DNA of 64,000 bases from Trichosphaerium sp. ATCC 40318. Its lineage: Eukaryota; Protista; Tubulinea. The position numbers and the translations under genes were made by a program. The stretch is from NCBI GenBank assembly GCA_038496445.1, contig JALMLS010000461.1, positions 124,001 through 188,000 of the forward strand, given 5' to 3'. A model generated the notes under the pieces. That model did not search any database. It was given only the letters and a program-made list of their open reading frames with translations, and was not told the DNA's origin. This document shows, piece after piece, positions 33,187 through 58,870 of this stretch (the first letter of the stretch is position 1; every line of letters starts with the position of its first letter).

Positions 33187-33871
33187 ATGAACTCTTACAC
33201 TGGCGTCATTAATCTACCGTTGGAGGTTTCTACGCTCATTTTATCGTTCTTAGATAACTACGATCGATTTGCAGCAACACAGACTTGTTGGTACTTTTCT
33301 AGCATAATACGCGATATTCTTGGCTTCCTACAAGTTAACTGCTATGACTTGGACTGTATATGCTATTAAATTATCACCTGCCGTTTTACAGCATACTGAA
33401 ATTCTAAGTTACGACGATTGCCTCCCAGCTCTGCATCACCTCTCTGAAGCCAAACATATTAACCTGTACGGTTGTGAGACACTAACAGATGATAATCTAA
33501 AACATCTTGGAAACATTAAAAAGATAAACATTGGATATTGTACCAAAATAACTGACAGAGGAATCAAAATGCTCGCCGGTGTGCATACTATAGATTTAAG
33601 TTGGTGCAAGAAAGTGACAGATAAAGGTGTCATGGCACTATCAGGCGTACATACTATCAAATTGAGCTGTACTAGTATTGTAGGTCAGTGCTTTAAATCT
33701 CTTGCTGCTAGTGCACATGATGTTGATATTTCGTACACTAAAATAGCAGACAGGTATATAAAAGATCTTTCGGGCATACACACCATAAATATCACAGGAT
33801 GTAAAGGAATTTCTGTTGCCAGTATTAAAGTTTTAGTGGGCGTTCATAAAGTAATAAAACCTGACACGTGA
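33187..33871 (+). CDS. F-box + LRR (GVHTI-type) protein with a frame break near 33334-33391 (intron or frameshift)
   Basis: The F-box INLPLEVSTLILSFLD..QTC and the LRRs (AGVHTIDLSWCKKVTDKG) lie in different frames. Confidence 0.75.
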
Positions 33872-34711: not shown

Positions 34712-35294
34712 AAAAAAACCAACATAGGAAACCTACTTTTTTTCAAGAATAAAAAACACGTGTATACTAGATTTTGGTGACTTTGTTTCGAACTGAATTA
34801 CATATTTTAGTCATGGTTGCGTCGATCAAGTATTGAGGCACTATTTTAAATGACAGCACTTTTTTTATCTTTGGGTTTTGGCAGGATCTTAGTTCATCAC
34901 CTTCAACAAAACCCTTGAAGGGCCCTGTCACTTCACAATGCTGAATAGGGTATTGGTACATCAAAGAAGGCAGCGTTTTGGTAGATTACACTGGAAGACA
35001 AAATGCCAACCCTAAGCAAACACGTTCAAAAGAATTGCGGCAACTTACTGTTCACAGAACGTGAAGACAGGTCAGAGTATTCTTACTCTAGTACCGTTAG
35101 TTACGGACTGTTTTGCCACTTCTGCAAAAGTGTTTGGAATCTATGGTGTACCAGTGCAAGATCTTAAACTTTACAGTTCCAGAATGGAACGCGCATAACC
35201 AAAAGGAAAAAGCGCACATTTAAAACTAGAAACTGTGCGAGCGTTAAGTCACGTGGCACAAAACTACAGTTCACCTGTTTAACTTTGTGTAACA

Positions 35295-38200
35295 ATGGCT
35301 GAGAGGAAAGAAACGACTGTTTGGATAAACGAACTTCATTACGAGGATTTCGTACGAGCGAGAACCAAAAGATTCACTGTGTTTAACGTTAAAAATAAAA
35401 GGGTTGGGATGAAAATGAAGGTGTGGAAGTTGCTGGGCCTGCTGGTACTAATTTGAACGGATGGAAACTTACTTTCTACGATGGAAGCGGTAAACCGTAT
35501 AAAACAACACCATTAAAAGGTAGATTACCTAATCTCCAAGCTGGCATGGGTACGTTACTTTTTTGGATATTTTTAACTTTAATCACGTGACATCGCTTTT
35601 TTAACGTTATTCCAAGGGACACTGTTCTTCTACGCACCTTATATCCATAACGGTATGAGTTTCTTGCCAAAGATTCGTTATGTCGTTAGAAATAAAATCT
35701 TGACAGTTTTTTGCCTTTAGGAAAGTCCGGCGTATGTCTATCAAACAAACAAGGAGATTTGGTTCAATTTCTCTCTTACGAAGGCCAAATAACAGGCGCT
35801 GAAGGTACTAGACTAAGGATTGGGTCTTTTCAGAGCTAATCTCTATGTATAGGTATTGCTGCAGGCGTTAAAAGCGAAAATCTGCCCGTGAAAGAGGTAC
35901 GCTCATCTGGTTTCGAAAAAGTGTCCTTACGTTGTTGTATAGTCAGGGTTCTCTTCCAGGCGTTCATCTCTCCAACTTCAAGGGCAAGGTAATGTTTACG
36001 AAGATTTCGCGTGGACAGGACCTATCGCAAGAAATCCCGGCGGTGTTAACAGTAAACAAAAGTTTGGTACAGTACTTTTGTAGTTTTTTTTACGAACGTT
36101 TTGCTGACCATTACCTTTTTTCGATAGTGAGGAGACCAACTTCAGGACCTTTCTCTATCGAACCTCATCTCGCAAATAACAAGAAGAGGCATCATACTGA
36201 AGAATATGAACTTGACTATCTCGTTGTTCGTAGAGGCTTTGAGTTTACTATTAAAGTATCGTTTCCAGGCACGTGATCAACCTTATATGTTCTTTTTTTA
36301 ACGCTTTGCATTTAGGTGATGATGTTGAACTTATTCTCAAGGACATACCTGACAAAGAGAATGCTGTAACTATACCTGTTACCAAAGAAGCTCCTAAGGA
36401 TAAGAGTAAGCCTTACGCTTACTACACAGAGAAAGCAGAGCACAGCGGAGAAATAAGTCTTTGGTAATTTAAACAAAAATCTAACTTGTTTTGACGTTTT
36501 GAACTGACACAAAATTAGCGTTCCTTCTGATTATCCTATTGGTATCTTCTCATTGAAGGCTACATCAGATGGTCAAAAGACTAAGGAAGGATTTTATGTA
36601 CGATAGCGATAGTTGTCGTCAACTCAAAGCTTATCTAAACCTTTAGATTATCGTAATGTTCAACCCTTGGAATGACCAAGACAGTGTATACATGGAAGAT
36701 GAAAAGCAAAGATATGAATATGTCCTTGAGGATAACGGTCTCATTTGGGTTGGTAGTGCAAATCACAATGGCCCTAGGTATGTCTTAAGAAAGGCCCGAT
36801 GATAAACTCAAGTGACTTGTTTTTTAGAGCTTGGAATTTCGCTCAGTTCTCTGCTAAGAGTGTCCTTGCTTCAATGAGACTATTATGGGCTCTTCCTTAT
36901 GCTAAGAGAAATGATCCTATAATAGTTTGTAGACATATGAGCGCTATGGTGAACTCAAACGACGAGGATGGTGTTCTTGTTGGAAACTGGAGTGGAAAGT
37001 ACGATGATGGCACTTCTCCTTCTCGTACGTTACCAAAAATTAATCATTTCGAAGTACATATCTACTGACACTTGTTATAGAGTGGACAGGTAGCGAGGAT
37101 ATATTAGACGTAAGGATGAAATAGATTGTTACCTTGATAATCAGATACTCACCTTGTTTAGCAATATTATGTAAAAGAGGAATCTGTCAAATATGGCCAA
37201 TGTTGGGTATGTGCTTATTGTTAATCTCTTTTATTAATAGGTTATTAGGTATTTAGCGGTGTGTTGACAACAGTATGCAGGTATGGGAATATGTATATAT
37301 AGGTTATTTAACGTTTATTGTAAGAGCTATTGGTATACCATGCAGATCTGTTACGAACTTTGATAGCGCACACGATACCAATATGAACAGGTAAACATAA
37401 ATTATCTTTTTCTTTCAATGACTTGATTTAACACCTATCTGAAGAACAGTGGATAAGTTCTACGATGCTGATTACAACGCAGATGCGTCAAGAACAAGTG
37501 ATAGTATCTGGTAAGACAAACACGAACTCTAATTGTGATCAACTTTATTAAATTCTGTTTTTTGCAAAAAACAGGAACTTTCACGTGTGGAATGATGTCT
37601 TTATGAAACGTCCTGATATCGGTAACGAATACAATGGTACGCTAACTGAGGTATTGCATTTTGAGTTTACAGTTTGAAATAAATAGGCTGGCAAGCACTA
37701 GACGCTACACCTCAAGAGCGTAGTGAAGGTATTTACAAGACTGGTCCTTGTCCTCTTGTCGGCATCAAAGAAGGTGATAAGAATGTCAAGTATGATAGCG
37801 AGTTTATCTATGCTGAAGTAAACGCTGACATCAAGTACGCAATCGAAAAAATAATAACCCAACAAAAAAAACCAAAGAAAAATGTTTGTTCTGTAATCTC
37901 ATTTTTTTTACAGTCATTACTTGGTTCAAGAAGATGGCTCAACAAAGTTGATTAAGAAAATCACTTCCCATGTTGGTAAACAGTTAAGTACCAAACAAGT
38001 AGGAAGAGATAGGTTGAACGAAATTACAGACCAATACAAGCATACTGAAGGTATTAAAAACTTGCAAAGAAAAAAACCTAATACTCGGTAGGCACAAAAG
38101 AAGAGCGTGCAGCTCATCAAGGTGGTGAAGAAGGTGAAGAAGGTACAGTGGTTTCAAATAGAGGGTATTGCTGAGCGTGGTTTAGGAGAGTTGGATGTCT

Positions 38201-39017
38201 CTATGACGGTTGGAAAAGCTGTTTGTGGTGAAACTGTTTCTTTGTCTGTTACAATTTCAAAAAGAGATGGAGCTAAACCTGAAACTCGCCGTGCAGAGTA
38301 CCTCAATTATTTTCTTTCATATCTTTTTATTTTTAACGTCGATCTGTTAGTGTGAGCGTACATATTTCTGTTGTTTCTTACACTGGAAAAGCGAAGGAGC
38401 AAGTGTTGACCAAGAATGCTAAAATGACAATTTCTGATACTGACACATTTACTGTTAACATTGAAGAAAAAACTTACAGAAAGTTCTTGGACGCACGTGT
38501 GCTTGAGTTATCTTTACCTAAAATTATAAATAGGATGATTGCTACTTCCAAGCATGGGCTGTTGTGAAGTTTGATACTGATGAAATGGATATTGTTACAA
38601 AAGAGTAAGTGCACTTCCTTCATCGAACGGCTGTGAATTAAAAAAATGTTTAGTTTCGATTTTGAGATGCCTGAAGTTGTAGTCACTGCAGATGGAGACT
38701 TCGTTGTTGGAAAGAAAACTGTTATTACTGTTACAGCAACCAACCCACTTGACGTACCTCTGACAGACGTTACAGCGTCAATCGAAGGTAAACTCTAAAA
38801 AATTCTCTTTAAGCAACAGGTCACTAATCTATGAATTTCAGGTGCAAGAATTCTTCATCGTACATTAGTTCTAATGGACAAGATTGCTCCACACTCGACT
38901 GGATCATGCGAGCTATCTATAACACCAACAATGAAAGGGGAAAAGAATATTGCAGTGTCTATTGAATCTAAAGAATTGATTGGCATGAATACCTTCTTAC
39001 ATGTTGATGTTATCTAA
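35295..39017 (+). CDS. Animal-type protein-glutamine gamma-glutamyltransferase with an N-terminal LTD-like domain
   Basis: N-domain [16 protein letters not shown]. Core [23 protein letters not shown] (Cys), WNFHVWND (His), [11 protein letters not shown] (Asp), FIYAEVNAD. Two C-terminal beta-barrels. More than 20 introns. Confidence 0.95.
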
Positions 39018-39456: not shown

Positions 39457-40504
39457 ATGAATGAAGAAGAGGTTAGCCAGAACATTAGTGACCTTGTCGC
39501 GCTCCCCGTTGAACTAATAGTTCATATTCTCAAACAAGGCACTTTTACACTTCGTTCCGCACAAACTTGCCGCTTCTTGCGGGATATTGTCCATAACCAT
39601 GTCGGATATGATCAAATTATTGTTAAAAGCAGTACCGAGGTGATGATGCTTTCTGGCAGCCCTTTATTGCAGAATACACCCATTCTGTTCTACAGGTATA
39701 GAGATGTAAACGACAATCAGTTGAGGTTACTAGCAGGAGTACATACAATCAAGATGATTAGTTGTGGATCAATAACAGATGAAGGCATTAAAGCATTGGT
39801 TGGTGTACACACCATAAATTTGAAATGCTGTGATGTAACAGATGAAGGCGTTAAAGCATTGGCTGGTGTACACAGATGAAGGCATTAAAGCATTGGCTGG
39901 TGTACACACCATAAATTTGAAATACTGTGATGTAACAGATGAAGGCATTAAAGCATTGGCTGGTGTACACACCATAAATTTGAAATGCTGTGATGTAACA
40001 GATGAAGGCGTTAAAGCATTGGCTGGTGTACACACTATAAATTTGAAACGCTGTGATGTAACAGACGAAGGCATTAAAGCATTGGCAGGAGTACACACCA
40101 TAAATGTGTCATGCTGCACAAAAGTAACAGATGAAGGCGTTAAAGCATTGGCTGGTGTACACACCATAAATTTGGGATACTGTTACATAACAGGCAAAGG
40201 CATTAAAGCATTGGCAGGTGTACACACTATAAATTTGAAACGCTGTGATGTAACAGACGAGGGCATTAAAGCATTGGCAGGAGTACACACTATAAATTTG
40301 AAATGCTGTGATGTAACAGATGAAGGCATTAAAGCATTGGCAGGTGTACATGAGATTGATCTACAAGAGACAAAGGTAACAGATGAAGGATTGAAAGCAT
40401 TGGCAGGTGTACACACTATAACCCTGTATGGTTGCTCCTCAACTTCAAAAGAGGGTGTCCAGGCAGCCGGTGCACAGGTAGTAAGGGCAGATTTCATTAT
40501 TTAA
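39457..40504 (+). pseudogene. F-box + LRR gene frameshifted by a 29-nt deletion in the repeat array
   Basis: F-box LVALPVELIVHIL..QTC. One 72-nt unit at ~39873 lacks accataaat...gtaac, which shifts the frame. Confidence 0.7.
39770..40420 (+). repeat. Near-perfect 72-nt tandem repeat encoding VTDEGIKALAGVHTINLKCCD-type LRRs
   Basis: About nine highly similar copies of acagatgaaggc[a/g]ttaaagcattggc[t/a]gg[t/a]gtacacac. Confidence 0.95.
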
Positions 40505-41734: not shown

Positions 41735-43579
41735 TTAGATGTCATCATCAGGTATTACTAAGTCATCATCTGGTTCAATATGTTCAACCATAAGTGATTT
41801 AAACTCTCCATTTTCACAACAACCATATCTTGATAAAGTGCCATCTTCAAGCCACTCCTTATATTCACCTTTACGTTCACCATCTTCAAAGAAACAATGT
41901 AAACTTAACTGCCCATTAGGATGCCACTCTCTGCATTCACCATGTTGAATACCATTAACATAATTAGAATGCTCATTAAGCTGTCCATTCTCGTACCAAT
42001 CTTTATAAGAATCAACACGTTTATCATCTTCAAAGTAACATACAAGACTTATAACACCATTACCAAACCATTCCATACATTTTCCATTCTTTTTACCATC
42101 AACATAAATAGTATGTTCCTTCAACTGACCGTTCTCATGCCATAGTTTATAATCACCAACATGTTTTCCTTTAGAAAAATTTCCAAGAAAACTTCTTTGT
42201 CCGTTATCAAACCACTCCTCACATTTACCTTCTTGTAATCCGTTAATATTAAAAGTATGTTCTTTAAGCTGCCCATTAGTATGCCACTCATTATAAACGC
42301 CATCAGCTTCACCGTTGATGTAATTTCCCAAAGTAGAAAGTTGACCATTTTCATACCATTCCTTGTACTCTTTTGTGTGTTTACCGTCTTTATAATAACA
42401 TAATAAACTCTGAACACCATTTCTATGCCATTCTTTACATATACCTTGCTTAACACCTTGAACAAAAATAGTACGTTCACGTATTTGACCATTATCATGC
42501 CAAACTTTTTTTTCACTATTTCTTTTTCCTTTATCATAAGTACAATGAACATGAAGTTCTCCATTTGGATGCCACGCTCTCTCTTCTCCATGCATAACAC
42601 CTTCTTTAAAATAACTATGATCCTTCAACTCACCATTATCATACCACTCCTTATAATCGCCGTCTTTTTTGTCATTCTTAAAGAAACAAACTAAACTCAA
42701 CTGTCCGTTTTCATGCCACTCCCTGCTTTCTCCTTCAAATTTATCATCTTTATAGAAACTTAACTCTTTCAATTCGCCATTCTCATACCACTCTTTATAC
42801 TCTCCATCTGATTTACCATCTTTATAATTAACAAGTACAGCTTGTTGTCCGTTATCATGCCACTCTTTATACTCACCAACATGTTTACCATTTTCGAAAA
42901 AGCAAATCAGATTTAACTTCCCGTTCATATGCCACTCTTCACATTTACCATGTTTTTTACCTTCCTTGTAATTATTACGTTCTGATAATTGTTTATTACG
43001 ATACCAATCCCAATAACCATCCACGTGGACGTCATTTTCAAAAAAACAAAGTAAACTCGGAGATCCGTCTTCATACCACTCCTCACACTTTCCGCTTCTT
43101 TTACCATCCTTAAATGACTTTCGTTCACACATTGTACCATCCTCGAACCATTCAATATGTTCTCCATTAGCTTTACCGTTCTTAAACCATAAACTCGCTT
43201 TAAGTACACCAGATTCATACCATTTGTACCACTTTCCTTCCTTATCAAGGTTTTTATTAAAATGTGTTGCGAGAGCAGACGTTTTTGATAGAGAAGGCCA
43301 TGAAGTGAATGATTTTATGTTATATGTACATATAACCTTTTGTATATCAGATGGTAACTGTAATAACGTCCATGGAGGCTTTTCTAGTTTTAAAAATTAA
43401 CGTTTAGATTCTATTGACACCGTTTCGTTATAAAATCGATTAGAAAGGTAATAAAACACCAGGATAAGATGTTTTAGACGGTTTATACCGTTTATTTTTA
43501 GTTAATTCAATTGTTCTAACGAGAAAACAAACTTACGTGTATCGCCGGTGTTCTTGCGTTTTGCTGGAGGCGACTTCAT
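41735..43579 (-). CDS. F-box-like + MORN-variant (YwqK-type) repeat protein
   Basis: Exon 1 MKSPPAKRKNTGDT, one intron (43385-43536), then LLQLPSDIQKVI and ~20 uninterrupted 24-aa G.YKEW.eNGQL repeats. Confidence 0.85.
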
Positions 43580-43986
43580 TTATCGATTTTAATGCGTAGC
43601 TGTTACGAACACATCTAGCGTAAACTCACGAAAAGCCCGGTCAACGCTATTCCAAGAACTCAAGCTTTCCCTAAACTTTATACTACGACCATGCCATAAC
43701 AATGGTGTGACTGATAAGTTTTTTTCAGCCTTGCTCGTGCACCAGCTATCAATATTTTACCGCAACCTGGTCACTCAACTAAACGTGATGTTCCAAACAT
43801 TATATCGCTACATGTAAACGCCTATCAACACGGTAACAAGAATTTACAACCAACAAGGATCGTTTGCTCAGGAGTGATTTTATCAGGCGACTCACGATGA
43901 TTGAATAGCCTCTGACAGCGTCTATTTTGCATTTACATATTGTTACTAAATCACCCGCAAACACAAAAAAAAAACTGGTACTCTTT

Positions 43987-45942
43987 TTAATTTTTCTTTC
44001 TTGGCTCAGCCTTCAGAGATAAATTGTACAAATCGTTATCATCCATCGTAACCTTCCATCCCGTTATGAATGATTTAATCCAAGGGATAGATTTAAATCC
44101 ATAGCAAGGTTTTAAATTGCTGTTAAATCTTCCAACAATCTTGACTAACATTGAATTCTTGTGCAAATTAAAAAATGGTTTCTGTGACGAATTGCCATCT
44201 CTAATAAATGTGAAGTCTGTCATATAAAAACCAATATAAGGCACTTGCGGTAGACCTGTGATAGAGTGATCTCTACAGTAAGTGAGTACAACAGAATACA
44301 ATACAAAAGGTTATGAATGAAATAGAAAAAAAAAACATACAGGCAAAATCTGCGAAGCTTTACGAATGAACCGTTTGAACTTAGCTGTTCTGAAACGCTA
44401 TCATACACTTTCATAGTAGACTTTGATATCTAAGATTAAAATATAAACAACAGAGCGGTGGGCAAAAGGGAAAGTATGAAATCTTTTGGTGTACCTTCGC
44501 CCATGACACTTTCAATCTAAAAACTGGTGTGGTTTTGATGCCACTTATTATGGCCGTAGCATCTAATGTGTTTCCCAAAGATAACAGCTGTTCGGCAAGT
44601 CTGATAAAATATGATATTCTGGAAGCACGGATCTTAGCGCTTTCGCCTGATAAAACAGACTGAGGAACAAGTCCATGATGCTACCCAAAAATTATTTCAG
44701 ACCAAAAAAAAAAAAAAAGTTGCAAGATATTGTTTCCCTGCTGTCTTACCAAGTTAAATTTATTGATTAGTTTTTGCATTGAAGGATTTGTATTATAGGC
44801 AGCATCAATACAAGAACTTTCTCTCATTCTGTATATAAATAGATTAGAACAATTAACTTTTGTTCAAAAAAAGTCAGCCTACTTACAGTTCATGTGACAT
44901 AAGTGTTAACTCAATAGCTATTTCTCTTTCTGGTATCCCCCATAGTATATCAGTCTGCTTAACGTTTTTCTTGCGTTTTAAAAGCTTTGCTTGGGAAACG
45001 GTTGAATAACGGAATCCATGAAAGCAAAATGTTGACAGCGGTAGCTAAAAATAACTATTAAGGTTACCAACTTAAGTACATTGCTCTGAGGTTTTACCTT
45101 ATTTTCAAGCGCCCTTTTACACCTATCAGAGAATGCTTCTGTTAAGATTTTATAGTGTTCTGGTGATAGCACTGCAAGAGAAGATTCAAATTCTGGTGCA
45201 AAATTCTGGGACTTAACAATGTCATCACAAAGTGGCACGTGAGATAAAACATATGCCAAAAACTGAATTATTCTATAACATGTTGTTCTTAGTTTCTAAA
45301 CGTCCAAACTATAGATTAAACGGTACCTGTGAGCATCAATACTTTTGGGTTTTTGTTTGTATGTTGACATTAACTCCTTAATGAGTTGAGGTCCAAAGCC
45401 TTCAGAGAACAGATCTCCAGCTGCTATTGCCAGGAACTCGCCTAAGATGATGGAAATTGATATAATGATATGTTTGTTGTATTACTAGAGAACGTACTTG
45501 AAAGGTCATACTTGACTGTTTTAAGGCATAAGTTTGAAACATCTTCACATCTTACAAACTTTGTGTTGTGACATATCAATTTAACATAACCTTTAATAGT
45601 ACAGGCTCGTATTTGCTCGATTGTGAAAGGTCCTTTGCAATTCTCTGATTTTTGAGTAAATTTAATCTCTTTACATGATCGTATGTCATTGTATAGTAAC
45701 TACAATACAAGATTAATATGAAAAGATATTAACACCTTCTGAACCAAAAAAAAAATTAAAAAAATTTCACGTGTCAACACCCACACCCGACTAGCGTAGA
45801 AGTAGGTGCATTTTTTGTTTTTTTCCATATATAGTATTGCTACGGTTATAGTTGTTCTTTTCCGAAAGTTGATAATGGTCGAAAAAAAAGGAAGTTTGAT
45901 TGAAATTTCTTGATATTTTTGACCTAAAAGGGCGCACTGCAT
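43987..45942 (-). CDS. RasGEF (REM + CDC25 domain); start uncertain
   Basis: IAIELTL, MQKLINKFN, RISYFIRLAE..GN, PVFRLKVSW, PQVPYIGFYMTDFTFIRDGN, LYNLSLKAEPR. Confidence 0.9.
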
Positions 45943-57699: not shown

Positions 57700-58870
57700 C
57701 TAATGTTCTGGTATCTTTCTAAGAGTTTTTTTTACATAATTATAAGGGAAATATCCGTAGTTTTCATTGTGTCTACCAAACCACCAATCCTAATTACAAG
57801 TTATTTACCAATTAAAAAAACTGGTGTGTACATCTGCATCGTCAAGAACAAGAATTTCATCCCTCTTGGAGAAACCCAGATCGTCTTCTTCTTGAGGTTT
57901 GAACGTGTACCTGGCAATAACCCAAAATTTCGGAGGTGCTATTTCTGAATACAGGTAAGTAACATTTTTCAAGTTTTACTGAAAAAGAAAGTTGTAGTTG
58001 TGATTAACTTCATCAAACACTTTACCTTTGATACCTCTTTCTGAAATATTCTCACATCCAATAAGTTTAACACTATGAGCACCAGCAAGGACTTTTATCC
58101 CTTTATCTGTTACAGAGGTAAATGAAAGATCAATAGTGTGAACTCCAGCAAGTTCTTTTATTCCATCATCTGTTACTCTGGTTACTTGAAGATTAATAGT
58201 ATGGACACCTTTGAGTGCTTTGATACCCTCATCTGTTACTTTAACACAAGAAAGATCAATGGTGTGTACACCTTTAAGTGCCTTGACACCTTCATCTGTT
58301 ACATTTATGGTATATGAAAGATTAATTGAATGAACACCTTTTAGTGCTTTGATACCCTCATCTGTTACTTTAGTACGAGAAAGATCGATGGTGTGAACAC
58401 CTTTGAGCGCCTTGACACCTCCATCTGTTACATTTGAATTCCTGAGGATAATGGTGTGCACCCCAGTAAGTGCAATAGCACTGAAATCTGTAATGTACTC
58501 ACACCAAGTAATACCAATTAGTTCATTTTTAGCACGTTTCATGATATTTTCAGTTGGTATAGATACGTAGATTTTTGTGTGCCTTAGAACACCACTATGC
58601 TTTGCTGCTGATTTGGCCTGATTTTCTGTTGTAAGTGTTATTTTATCATACCCAATAATGTTATGAATGATAGAAGCTATGTAACAACATGTCTGGCATG
58701 CTGCAAATCGCGCTTTTGCTGTTTTAGATAAAATATAAGCTAAAATCTCTGTAGGCAGGTCAACTAATGTTGCCTCAGTACTACAACATTGTTTAGATGA
58801 GTGAGAAGATATTTATTGCACATCAGCACTAGTACCTTCGATAAACGGCTTCTGAATTGGTATTACTCAT
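57700..58870 (-). CDS. F-box + LRR + SH3 protein
   Basis: LVDLPTEILAYIL..QTC and GVHTIDLS repeats. After introns 57945-58025 and 57790-57831 the frame reads WVIARYTFKPQEEDDLGFSKRDEILVLDDAD|DWWFGRHNENYGYFPYNYV. Confidence 0.85.

What the first reader, a model, noticed from the sequence alone, without database searches (positions are those of the whole stretch)
35295..39017. Animal-type transglutaminase fused to a bacterial lamin-tail-like (LTD) domain
Seen: six spliced exons (35295-36066) give [128 protein letters not shown], in frame with a complete four-domain TGase that has an intact C-H-D triad. Known, from my recollection: the 'INE.HYDN..E.VE.AGPAGT.L.GW..QFLSYEG..SLQL.G.G..DF.W' module is the LTD-type domain at the N-terminus of bacterial secreted nucleases, and metazoan-type TGases do not normally carry it. 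Inference: a horizontally acquired and now intron-laden domain was recruited to target or regulate a protein cross-linker (cyst wall, wound repair or cytoskeleton). No signal peptide is apparent.
Basis: partly seen in the sequence, partly recalled or inferred. Interest (0 to 1): 0.8.

Follow-up and report, generated by a model that had tools for sequence, protein, structure and literature searches.

The report
Amoeba cross-linking enzyme with bacterial domain
An amoeba gene makes a single messenger RNA for a protein-cross-linking enzyme of the animal type. At its front end it carries a binding domain otherwise typical of secreted bacterial DNA-cutting enzymes, a real and conserved fusion that I found described nowhere and whose role is untested.

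Summary
A 25-exon gene (35295-39017, + strand) encodes 819 aa. Spliced transcript contigs from three studies join the six N-terminal exons to the transglutaminase (TGase) exons in one molecule.

Residues 6-165 align end to end with a ~160-aa bacterial module at 120-148 bits, median 43% and at most 50% identity. In the bacterial proteins that module scores as Pfam LTD (PF00932). It sits in secreted endonuclease I, EEP and HYR proteins of many phyla.

The rest is a collinear animal-type TGase with Cys420, His479 and Asp502. There is no signal peptide and no membrane segment.

The LTD part matches the host gene in codon use and intron density. An intron lies exactly on the domain border. All 23 coding differences between strains are synonymous.

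- **Supported:** bacterial origin of the domain, followed by domestication.
- **Inferred only:** its role as a targeting or binding head for a Ca2+-dependent cross-linker.
- **Not done:** the spliced protein has no reference, so I could not search it whole. How widespread the fusion is, including the 855-aa Physarum TGase, stays open.

The scan noted the same fusion three more times on other DNA of this genome (s1-390605, s1-409567, s1-404421); none was followed up. I found no paper describing it. Verdict: a new variant of a known kind, of moderate interest.

The parts
35295..39017 (+). Whole coding region: 25 exons, 819 aa, LTD-TGase fusion protein
   Evidence: Model. Spliced contigs of 2535 and 2573 nt cover it end to end. 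All 23 coding differences between runs are synonymous.
35280..35282 (+). In-frame TAA, 15 nt upstream of the ATG and inside the transcript
   Evidence: The X2 contig starts about 17 nt upstream of the ATG. This rules out an upstream extension or signal peptide in this exon.
35295..35351 (+). Exon 1, residues 1-19; the LTD starts at about residue 6 ([10 protein letters not shown])
   Evidence: Aligns with the bacterial FINE(I/L)HYDN start of the module.
35402..35549 (+). Exon 2, LTD residues 20-68
   Evidence: This exon alone gives 848 hits at E<=1e-3 among 1.84 billion representatives. The atlas lead is LTD clusters.
35617..35652 (+). Exon 3, LTD residues 69-80
   Evidence: The contig length fits. 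It aligns with the bacterial module.
35721..35804 (+). Exon 4, LTD residues 81-108 (QFLSYEG motif)
35853..35896 (+). Exon 5, LTD residues 109-123
35943..36066 (+). Exon 6, LTD residues 124-165 ([21 protein letters not shown]); end of the module
36067..36127 (+). Intron 6 (61 nt, phase 1), exactly at the LTD/TGase domain border
   Evidence: Joint seen in X1, X2 and X5. The border lies at codon 165, and the bacterial module ends at the aligned Q.F.
36128..36597 (+). Exons 7-9: TGase N-terminal beta-sandwich
   Evidence: Exon 7 matches Pfam Transglut_N at 1.8e-10, 41.6 bits, above the cut-off of 27.
36269..36315 (+). Intron 7, GC-AG, 47 nt
   Evidence: Joint that skips 47 nt in four runs; sequence.
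36647..38050 (+). Exons 10-19: TGase catalytic core
   Evidence: Exons 10, 11, 17 and 18 align collinearly with TG3, TG2, factor XIII and protein 4.2.
37201..37203 (+). Codon of catalytic Cys420 (YGQCW)
   Evidence: canonical GQCW active-site motif read directly from the sequence.
37582..37584 (+). Codon of catalytic His479 (NFHVWN)
   Evidence: Aligns with NFHVWNE of TG3, residues 328-346 (weak on its own, E 0.39).
37701..37703 (+). Codon of catalytic Asp502 ([10 protein letters not shown])
   Evidence: Aligns with TG2 354-401, WQALDPTPQE, at E 1.3e-15.
38092..39017 (+). Exons 20-25: acidic linker and the two C-terminal beta-barrels
   Evidence: Exon 25 matches Transglut_C at E 0.013, model positions 59-104 of 106, below the cut-off. 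Exon 24 matches factor XIII 629-663 at E 0.22. Joints.
38493..38533 (+). Intron 22, GC-AG, 41 nt
   Evidence: Joint 38492>38534 with ends GC..AG in four runs.

Best explanation
The gene encodes a cytosolic 91-kDa transglutaminase of the animal (papain-like Cys-His-Asp) type; it may leave the cell by an unconventional route. Its usual four domains are preceded by a fifth domain, a ~160-aa beta-sandwich of the bacterial lamin-tail-domain (LTD) kind.

Shown: (i) one mRNA and one ORF; (ii) the head domain is a full-length, well-conserved copy of the module that bacteria place in secreted endonuclease I, EEP-nuclease, HYR and T9SS-sorted proteins; (iii) it is fully domesticated, with six introns, host codon use, a domain-border intron and only synonymous variation between strains; (iv) the TGase part keeps its catalytic triad.

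Inferred: an ancestor of this amoeba took the module from a bacterium, probably as part of a nuclease gene, since the scan notes an intron-bearing endonuclease I-LTD gene in the same genome. The module was then joined to the 5' end of a TGase gene at an intron. It now works as a non-catalytic binding head that holds the cross-linker on a particular scaffold, such as the cell envelope or cortex, or a polymer such as DNA or glycan. On Ca2+ entry, isopeptide cross-links would then form at that place, for example to plug a wound or build the cell covering.
For: One transcript. LTD identity: the spliced N-terminus (residues 6-165) scores 120-148 bits per domain against 489 full-length bacterial modules, median identity 43%, maximum 50.6%. 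Those modules carry Pfam LTD above the 34.3-bit cut-off in most proteins tested, for example P0046 45.8, P0019 69.8 and P0062 92.4 bits (also the precomputed PF00932). They are named endonuclease or HYR proteins of Flavobacteriaceae, Xanthomonadales and Chloroflexota. Of 53 columns nearly invariant in bacteria, 46 are kept. Bacterial breadth: 848 hits with exon 2 alone, and relatives at 173 stretches in bacterial and archaeal genomes, the 80 loci listed coming from many bacterial phyla. Fold of a 50%-identical proxy: AF2 pLDDT 94, all-beta, lamin B1 Ig-like domain Z 6.3 over residues 1-99, DUF4876 protein Z 8.1 over 144 residues. Domestication: GC3 0.36 against 0.33, codon-use r=0.77, intron 6 at codon 165. 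Selection: 23 synonymous and 0 non-synonymous differences. TGase. No signal peptide or TM segment. The function of bacterial LTD is open: deleting the LTD of ExeM slows DNA degradation in vitro but barely in vivo, and envelope targeting has been proposed (PMC6085458).
Against: No experiment or structure bears on what the LTD binds, in bacteria or here. The direct Pfam scan of the single LTD exons gave nothing because they are too short, so LTD membership rests on transitive homology. The amoeba LTD sits on a long branch (1.0 against a median of 0.21), and 7 near-invariant residues are changed (D16E, N45D, Q78H, D82S, A85C, A105G, G119P), so its ligand may differ from the bacterial one. The tree had only one eukaryotic sequence and a biased bacterial sample, so donor and timing are not resolved. 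Ca2+ dependence is assumed from the family, not tested.
Confidence: 0.6

Rival explanations
1. The LTD is a regulatory pro-domain. It masks the TGase, as the activation peptide of factor XIII-A does, and must be cut off or displaced for activity.
For: It occupies the same N-terminal position as the factor XIII activation peptide, in front of the beta-sandwich. A short basic stretch, KQKFVRRP, sits at the border.
Against: A 160-aa folded domain that keeps 46 of 53 invariant positions of a bacterial binding-type module is far more than a masking peptide needs. From the title of Mottahedeh and Marsh 1998 (reference list seen), the active Physarum enzyme is 101 kDa, that is full size. That this enzyme carries the same domain is my assumption.
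Confidence: 0.15
2. The domain is not a bacterial import. It is an old eukaryotic LTD, of the same stock as lamin tails, inherited vertically and merely similar to the bacterial ones.
For: LTD-like domains without coiled coils occur in several eukaryotes (Koreny and Field 2016, PMC5630835). The amoeba sequence is on a long branch. Codon use and introns show no sign of recent arrival.
Against: It matches bacterial modules over all 160 residues at 43-50% identity, including the C-terminal ~60 residues that lie beyond the stretch matched by the Pfam LTD model and by the lamin Ig fold. Lamin Ig domains match the proxy model only at Z 6.3 and 16% identity. The module is very widespread in bacteria.
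Confidence: 0.1
3. Artefact: a mis-assembly or bacterial contamination joined to a eukaryotic gene, or two adjacent genes wrongly read as one.
For: Top hits of the N-terminus are all bacterial.
Against: The LTD part holds five spliceosomal introns of the same size and GTA-rich donor type as the TGase part. Independent transcript contigs from three studies span the junction. None of the 80 bacterial loci holds a TGase part.
Confidence: 0.01

Closest known systems
Physarum polycephalum transglutaminase (Wada et al. 2002, Eur J Biochem 269:3451; Mottahedeh and Marsh 1998)
   Same: It is an animal-type TGase in an amoebozoan. By my recollection of the abstract it has 855 residues from an mRNA of about 2.6 kb, about 165 residues longer than vertebrate TGases. 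That matches the 819 aa and the 2.5-kb transcript here. It is reported to act on cell damage, with LAV1-2 as substrate (PMC2837032).
   Different: I could not obtain its sequence, so whether its extra N-terminal part is this LTD is untested. No paper I could search calls it an LTD. An earlier agent's note names the present organism as the marine amoeba Trichosphaerium. That fits the published GC content and intron size, and it is a different amoebozoan lineage.
Vertebrate TG2, TG3 and factor XIII-A (PDB 1kv3, 1l9m, 1f13)
   Same: The domain order is collinear: beta-sandwich, catalytic core with the Cys-His-Asp triad, then two beta-barrels. Exon 18 is about 65% identical to TG2 354-401.
   Different: They have no LTD. 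Their N-terminus is the beta-sandwich itself, or a short activation peptide in factor XIII.
Bacterial secreted nucleases with LTD (Shewanella ExeM; endonuclease I-LTD proteins such as P0006 and P0156)
   Same: The same ~160-aa LTD module at 43-50% identity, with 46 of 53 invariant positions kept.
   Different: The bacterial proteins have a signal peptide and a nuclease domain (PF04231, PF03372 or PF01223), and often several LTD copies and a T9SS tail. Here there is one copy, no signal peptide, no nuclease and a TGase partner.
Lamin tail Ig-fold (lamin A/C 1ifr, lamin B1 7dtg)
   Same: Same Pfam family (PF00932) and beta-sandwich fold for the first ~100 residues of the proxy model (Z 6.3, rmsd 2.4 over 86 residues).
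   Different: Only about 16% identity. It lacks the C-terminal ~60-residue extension, and it is attached to a coiled-coil rod in the nucleus.

Membership tests
Animal-type transglutaminase (Transglut_N / Transglut_core / Transglut_C) | N-terminal beta-sandwich domain (PF00868) | tested here: met
   Exon 7: E 1.8e-10, 41.6 bits against a cut-off of 27.
Animal-type transglutaminase (Transglut_N / Transglut_core / Transglut_C) | Catalytic core with Cys-His-Asp in the GQCW, HxW and LDxTPQE motifs | tested here: met
   Cys420, His479 and Asp502. Exon 18 against TG2 at E 1.3e-15. Exons 10 and 11 against TG3, factor XIII and TG2 at E 1e-8 to 4e-11. Exon 17 alone is weak.
Animal-type transglutaminase (Transglut_N / Transglut_core / Transglut_C) | Two C-terminal beta-barrel domains (PF00927) | tested here: inconclusive
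   Exon 25: Transglut_C E 0.013, 16 bits, below the cut-off. Exon 24 against factor XIII 629-663: E 0.22. Exon 22: no hit. Length and collinearity fit, but single exons are too short for a clean test.
Animal-type transglutaminase (Transglut_N / Transglut_core / Transglut_C) | Ca2+-dependent transamidase activity | not testable with these tools
   Needs an enzyme assay.
Lamin tail domain, Pfam PF00932 (bacterial subtype) | Sequence match to the family model above its threshold | tested here: inconclusive
   Direct scan of exons 2, 4 and 6 gave no hit because they are 27-49 aa. The whole spliced domain has no reference and was not submitted.
Lamin tail domain, Pfam PF00932 (bacterial subtype) | Full-length homology to domains that are themselves PF00932 members | tested here: met
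   120-148 bits over residues 6-165 against modules of P0046, P0098, P0115 and others. These score 40-92 bits on PF00932.
Lamin tail domain, Pfam PF00932 (bacterial subtype) | Ig-like beta-sandwich fold like the lamin tail | tested here: inconclusive
   Only a 50%-identical bacterial proxy was folded (pLDDT 94). Lamin B1 gives Z 6.3, Foldseek lamin hits have E about 0.1, and the best match is a DUF4876 protein at Z 8.1.
Bacterial extracellular nuclease (endonuclease I, ExeM type) | A nuclease catalytic domain (PF04231, PF03372 or PF01223) | tested here: not met
   Everything after residue 165 is TGase. It is not a member; only the LTD is shared.
Bacterial extracellular nuclease (endonuclease I, ExeM type) | N-terminal signal peptide | tested here: not met
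   The ORF starts 5 residues before the domain, the first 30 aa are hydrophilic, and there is an upstream in-frame stop.

The most novel reading that the evidence does not exclude
The LTD-TGase fusion is an old and widespread amoebozoan invention that includes the biochemically studied Physarum enzyme. The bacterial nuclease-type LTD would give the cross-linker affinity for a polymer outside or at the edge of the cell, such as extracellular DNA, slime or the fibrous cell covering. Amoebae would then 'glue' wounds or build their coat on a DNA or glycan scaffold. That would also give the first functional handle on what bacterial LTDs bind.
Probability: 0.2. Interest if true: 0.7.

Novelty: new variant of a known kind. 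Interest (0 to 1): 0.45.

Why it matters
Animal-type transglutaminases are rare outside animals, and how they are aimed at their substrates is a central question for the family. Here a eukaryote has attached a bacterial domain of unknown function to one and kept it under strong purifying selection, apparently in several gene copies.

This matters in two ways. First, it is a clean, expressed example of a bacterial domain, rather than a whole gene, being built into a eukaryotic enzyme at an intron border. Second, the LTD is here separated from any nuclease. That argues it is a general targeting or binding module rather than part of DNA cleavage, and it offers a tractable protein for finding its ligand.

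Tried and rejected
1. An automatic splice-path search that maximised ORF length gave wrong introns. I replaced it with a hand model, corrected by the RNA joints.
2. My first model had a 19-nt intron, a GT intron 7 and a 35-nt intron 22. The RNA rejected these in favour of 43 nt, GC-AG and GC-AG.
3. Pfam and NCBIfam on single LTD exons gave no hits.
4. The atlas search gave only a weak lead to LTD for exon 2 (0.81), was uninformative for exon 6 and gave nothing for exon 11.
5. I looked for LTD-TGase relatives in five ways.
   - The best 150 of the 848 exon-2 hits hold no TGase part.
   - A region search from the closest bacterial module listed only bacterial multi-LTD proteins.
   - The exon-11 word search found nothing in its length range.
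   - The metagenome scan found six marine animal TGase genes with long introns and no LTD match within the fetched contigs.
   - Viral contigs gave nothing for the LTD or the TGase.
6. No solved structure matched the bacterial module by sequence.
7. Left out because the spliced protein, or its first 165 aa, has no reference and must not be typed: Pfam, HHpred and AlphaFold on the amoeba domain itself, and any whole-protein database search, cluster look-up or contig look-up.
Full report
**Gene model and transcript**

The region 35295-39017 (+) lies in an AT-rich (36-37% GC) eukaryotic window with very short introns. I built a splice model by hand and corrected it with public transcript assemblies.

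The final gene has 25 exons and 24 introns of 41-79 nt. Twenty-two introns are GT-AG, mostly with GTA donors, and two are GC-AG (36269-36315 and 38493-38533). The ORF has 819 codons and predicts 91.4 kDa with pI 5.2.

Two contigs, 2535 nt in run X1 and 2573 nt in run X2, cover the mRNA from exon 1 to about 80 nt past the stop. A third, in X5, starts in exon 6. The joint between the last exon of the N-terminal module and the first TGase exon (36065>36127, skips 61 nt, GT..AG) is present in X1, X2 and X5, which belong to three studies. In the contigs the stretch between exons 2 and 6 is 163 nt, exactly exons 3, 4 and 5 of the model.

These are Logan contigs, guessed to be RNA. That they lack all the introns is itself the sign that they are. 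An in-frame TAA 15 nt before the ATG lies within the X2 contig, so the protein starts at 35295.

**The N-terminal module**

Single exons are too short for Pfam or NCBIfam. The spliced domain has no reference, so I did not submit it to any remote tool.

Instead I searched exon 2 (49 aa, by reference) against 1.84 billion representative proteins. There were 848 hits at E<=0.001 and 130 at <=1e-10, with 41-63% identity. Nearly all were long proteins holding two to seven copies of the matching stretch.

I then compared the spliced 170-aa N-terminus locally with the proteins that search had fetched. It aligns from residue 6 to 165 with a repeated ~160-aa module at 120-148 bits per copy. Over 489 full-length copies in 240 proteins the median identity is 43% and the maximum 50.6%. 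Every one of the six exons takes part in the alignment, which independently confirms the splice model.

Pfam calls the first ~100 residues of that module LTD (PF00932), above the gathering score in most proteins tested. The same proteins carry Endonuclease_1, Calx-beta, dockerin and T9SS sorting domains. Named members are endonuclease, EEP-family or HYR proteins of Flavobacteriaceae, Xanthomonadales and Chloroflexota. A search seeded with the closest module returned 803 proteins, the best 120 mostly endonuclease I/PKD/LTD proteins.

A scan of one genome per bacterial and archaeal species with exon 2 found relatives at 173 stretches. The 80 loci listed come from Binatia, Chloroflexota, Bacteroidota, Planctomycetota, Acidobacteriota, Actinomycetota, Pseudomonadota, Myxococcota and others, at 45-65% identity. 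None has a TGase part nearby.

Of 53 alignment columns that are at least 90% invariant in bacteria, the amoeba keeps 46.

An AlphaFold model of the closest bacterial copy (50% identical, pLDDT 94) is an all-beta domain.
- Residues 1-99 superpose on the lamin B1 Ig-like domain (Z 6.3, rmsd 2.4 over 86 residues).
- The whole module is most like a Bacteroides DUF4876 protein (Z 8.1 over 144 residues).
- Foldseek gives only weak lamin hits.

**The TGase part**

- Exon 7 is Transglut_N (E 1.8e-10).
- Exons 10 and 11 match protein 4.2, TG3, factor XIII and TG2.
- Exon 18 is about 65% identical to TG2 354-401 and includes the catalytic Asp.
- Exon 17 carries NFHVWN, as in TG3.
- Exon 13 carries YGQCW.
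- The last two exons match the second barrel weakly.

The matches are collinear, with a constant offset of about 145-158 residues, which is the length of the LTD. There is no hydrophobic segment.

**Signs of domestication and constraint**

GC3 is 0.36 in the LTD part and 0.33 in the TGase part, and synonymous codon choice correlates at r=0.77. Intron density is similar in the two parts. Intron 6 (phase 1) falls exactly where the bacterial module ends.

On a quick tree the amoeba domain sits on a long branch next to one bacterial module (support 0.88). The sample is biased and holds only one eukaryote, so it says little about the donor.

The four runs differ from the window at 23 coding positions, two of them in the LTD. 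All 23 changes are synonymous, which is strong evidence of purifying selection on the whole ORF.

**Context**

An earlier agent's note calls this genome the marine amoeba Trichosphaerium. The published draft genome has 37.7% GC, 8.7 introns per gene and a mean intron of 75 nt (PMC10521059), which fits the window. I did not verify the identity by sequence. That paper and its held supplements do not mention transglutaminase or lamin.

First-stage notes of this scan list three more LTD-TGase loci on other pieces of the genome, an intron-rich endonuclease I-LTD gene and a tandem-LTD gene. None has been followed up and I could not read those pieces. If the notes hold, the genome has a small LTD family and at least four LTD-TGase copies. 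The nuclease-LTD gene would then be a plausible source of the domain.

**Literature**

No paper in the library links the lamin tail domain with a transglutaminase architecture. Koreny and Field note LTD-like domains in bacterial enzymes and in a few eukaryotic non-lamins (PMC5630835).

For the Shewanella nuclease ExeM, deletion of the LTD slows DNA degradation in vitro but hardly in vivo. The authors call the domain's role unresolved, with envelope targeting as one idea (PMC6085458).

Physarum has a well-known animal-type TGase that acts on cell damage. From my memory of the 2002 abstract it has 855 residues, about 165 more than vertebrate enzymes, so it may well carry the same head. I could not fetch the paper or the sequence.

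**Interpretation**

- **Shown:** a real, expressed, conserved fusion of a bacterial-type LTD to a catalytically intact animal-type TGase without a signal peptide.
- **Inferred:** the bacterial origin of the domain, from its very wide bacterial spread and its full-length similarity, including the part beyond the lamin-like core.
- **Inferred:** its joining at an intron.
- **Inferred:** its use as a binding head that places the cross-linker.

The pro-domain and vertical-descent alternatives are less likely but not excluded. Assembly artefact is excluded.

**Limits**

All remote searches used single exons or bacterial proxies.

Noticed in passing
window 41735-43132 (-): A 465-aa ORF with no introns, full of MORN_2 repeats (Pfam E 1.2e-44), lies 2.7 kb downstream of the gene in an otherwise intron-rich region. 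It coincides with a strong GC-skew dip (-0.33 at 42001-44000). The MORN_2 variant is, by my recollection, mostly bacterial, so this may be another and more recent import.
   Followed up: partly
window 33320-33871 (+), 39842-40504 (+), 57976-58542 (-): Three long open exons carry LRR_6 (ribonuclease-inhibitor-type) leucine-rich repeats and flank the TGase gene on both sides. They may belong to a local LRR gene cluster.
   Followed up: partly
window 36269-36315 and 38493-38533: Two of the gene's 24 introns are GC-AG, and both begin GCACGT. The RNA contigs of four runs confirm them.
   Followed up: yes
window 35283-35462: One low-depth contig of run X6 is colinear with the genome through intron 1. 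It has a 6-nt insertion (AACCAC after 35362) and an A>C at 35361, so it is either an unspliced or genomic read of another strain or allele.
   Followed up: no
L001-L006 (metagenome contigs): The six metagenome loci found with exon 11 are TGase genes with introns of 0.2-1.2 kb in marine and other samples. They look like animal genes. Within the fetched contigs, tblastn matched only the catalytic core, with no match to the LTD part.
   Followed up: partly
bacterial module, e.g. P0098:431-592: The Pfam LTD model covers only the first ~100 residues of the ~160-residue conserved bacterial module. The whole module is structurally closest to a DUF4876 protein (4q1z, Z 8.1). PF00932 and DUF4876 may therefore describe overlapping parts of one larger domain type.
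   Followed up: partly
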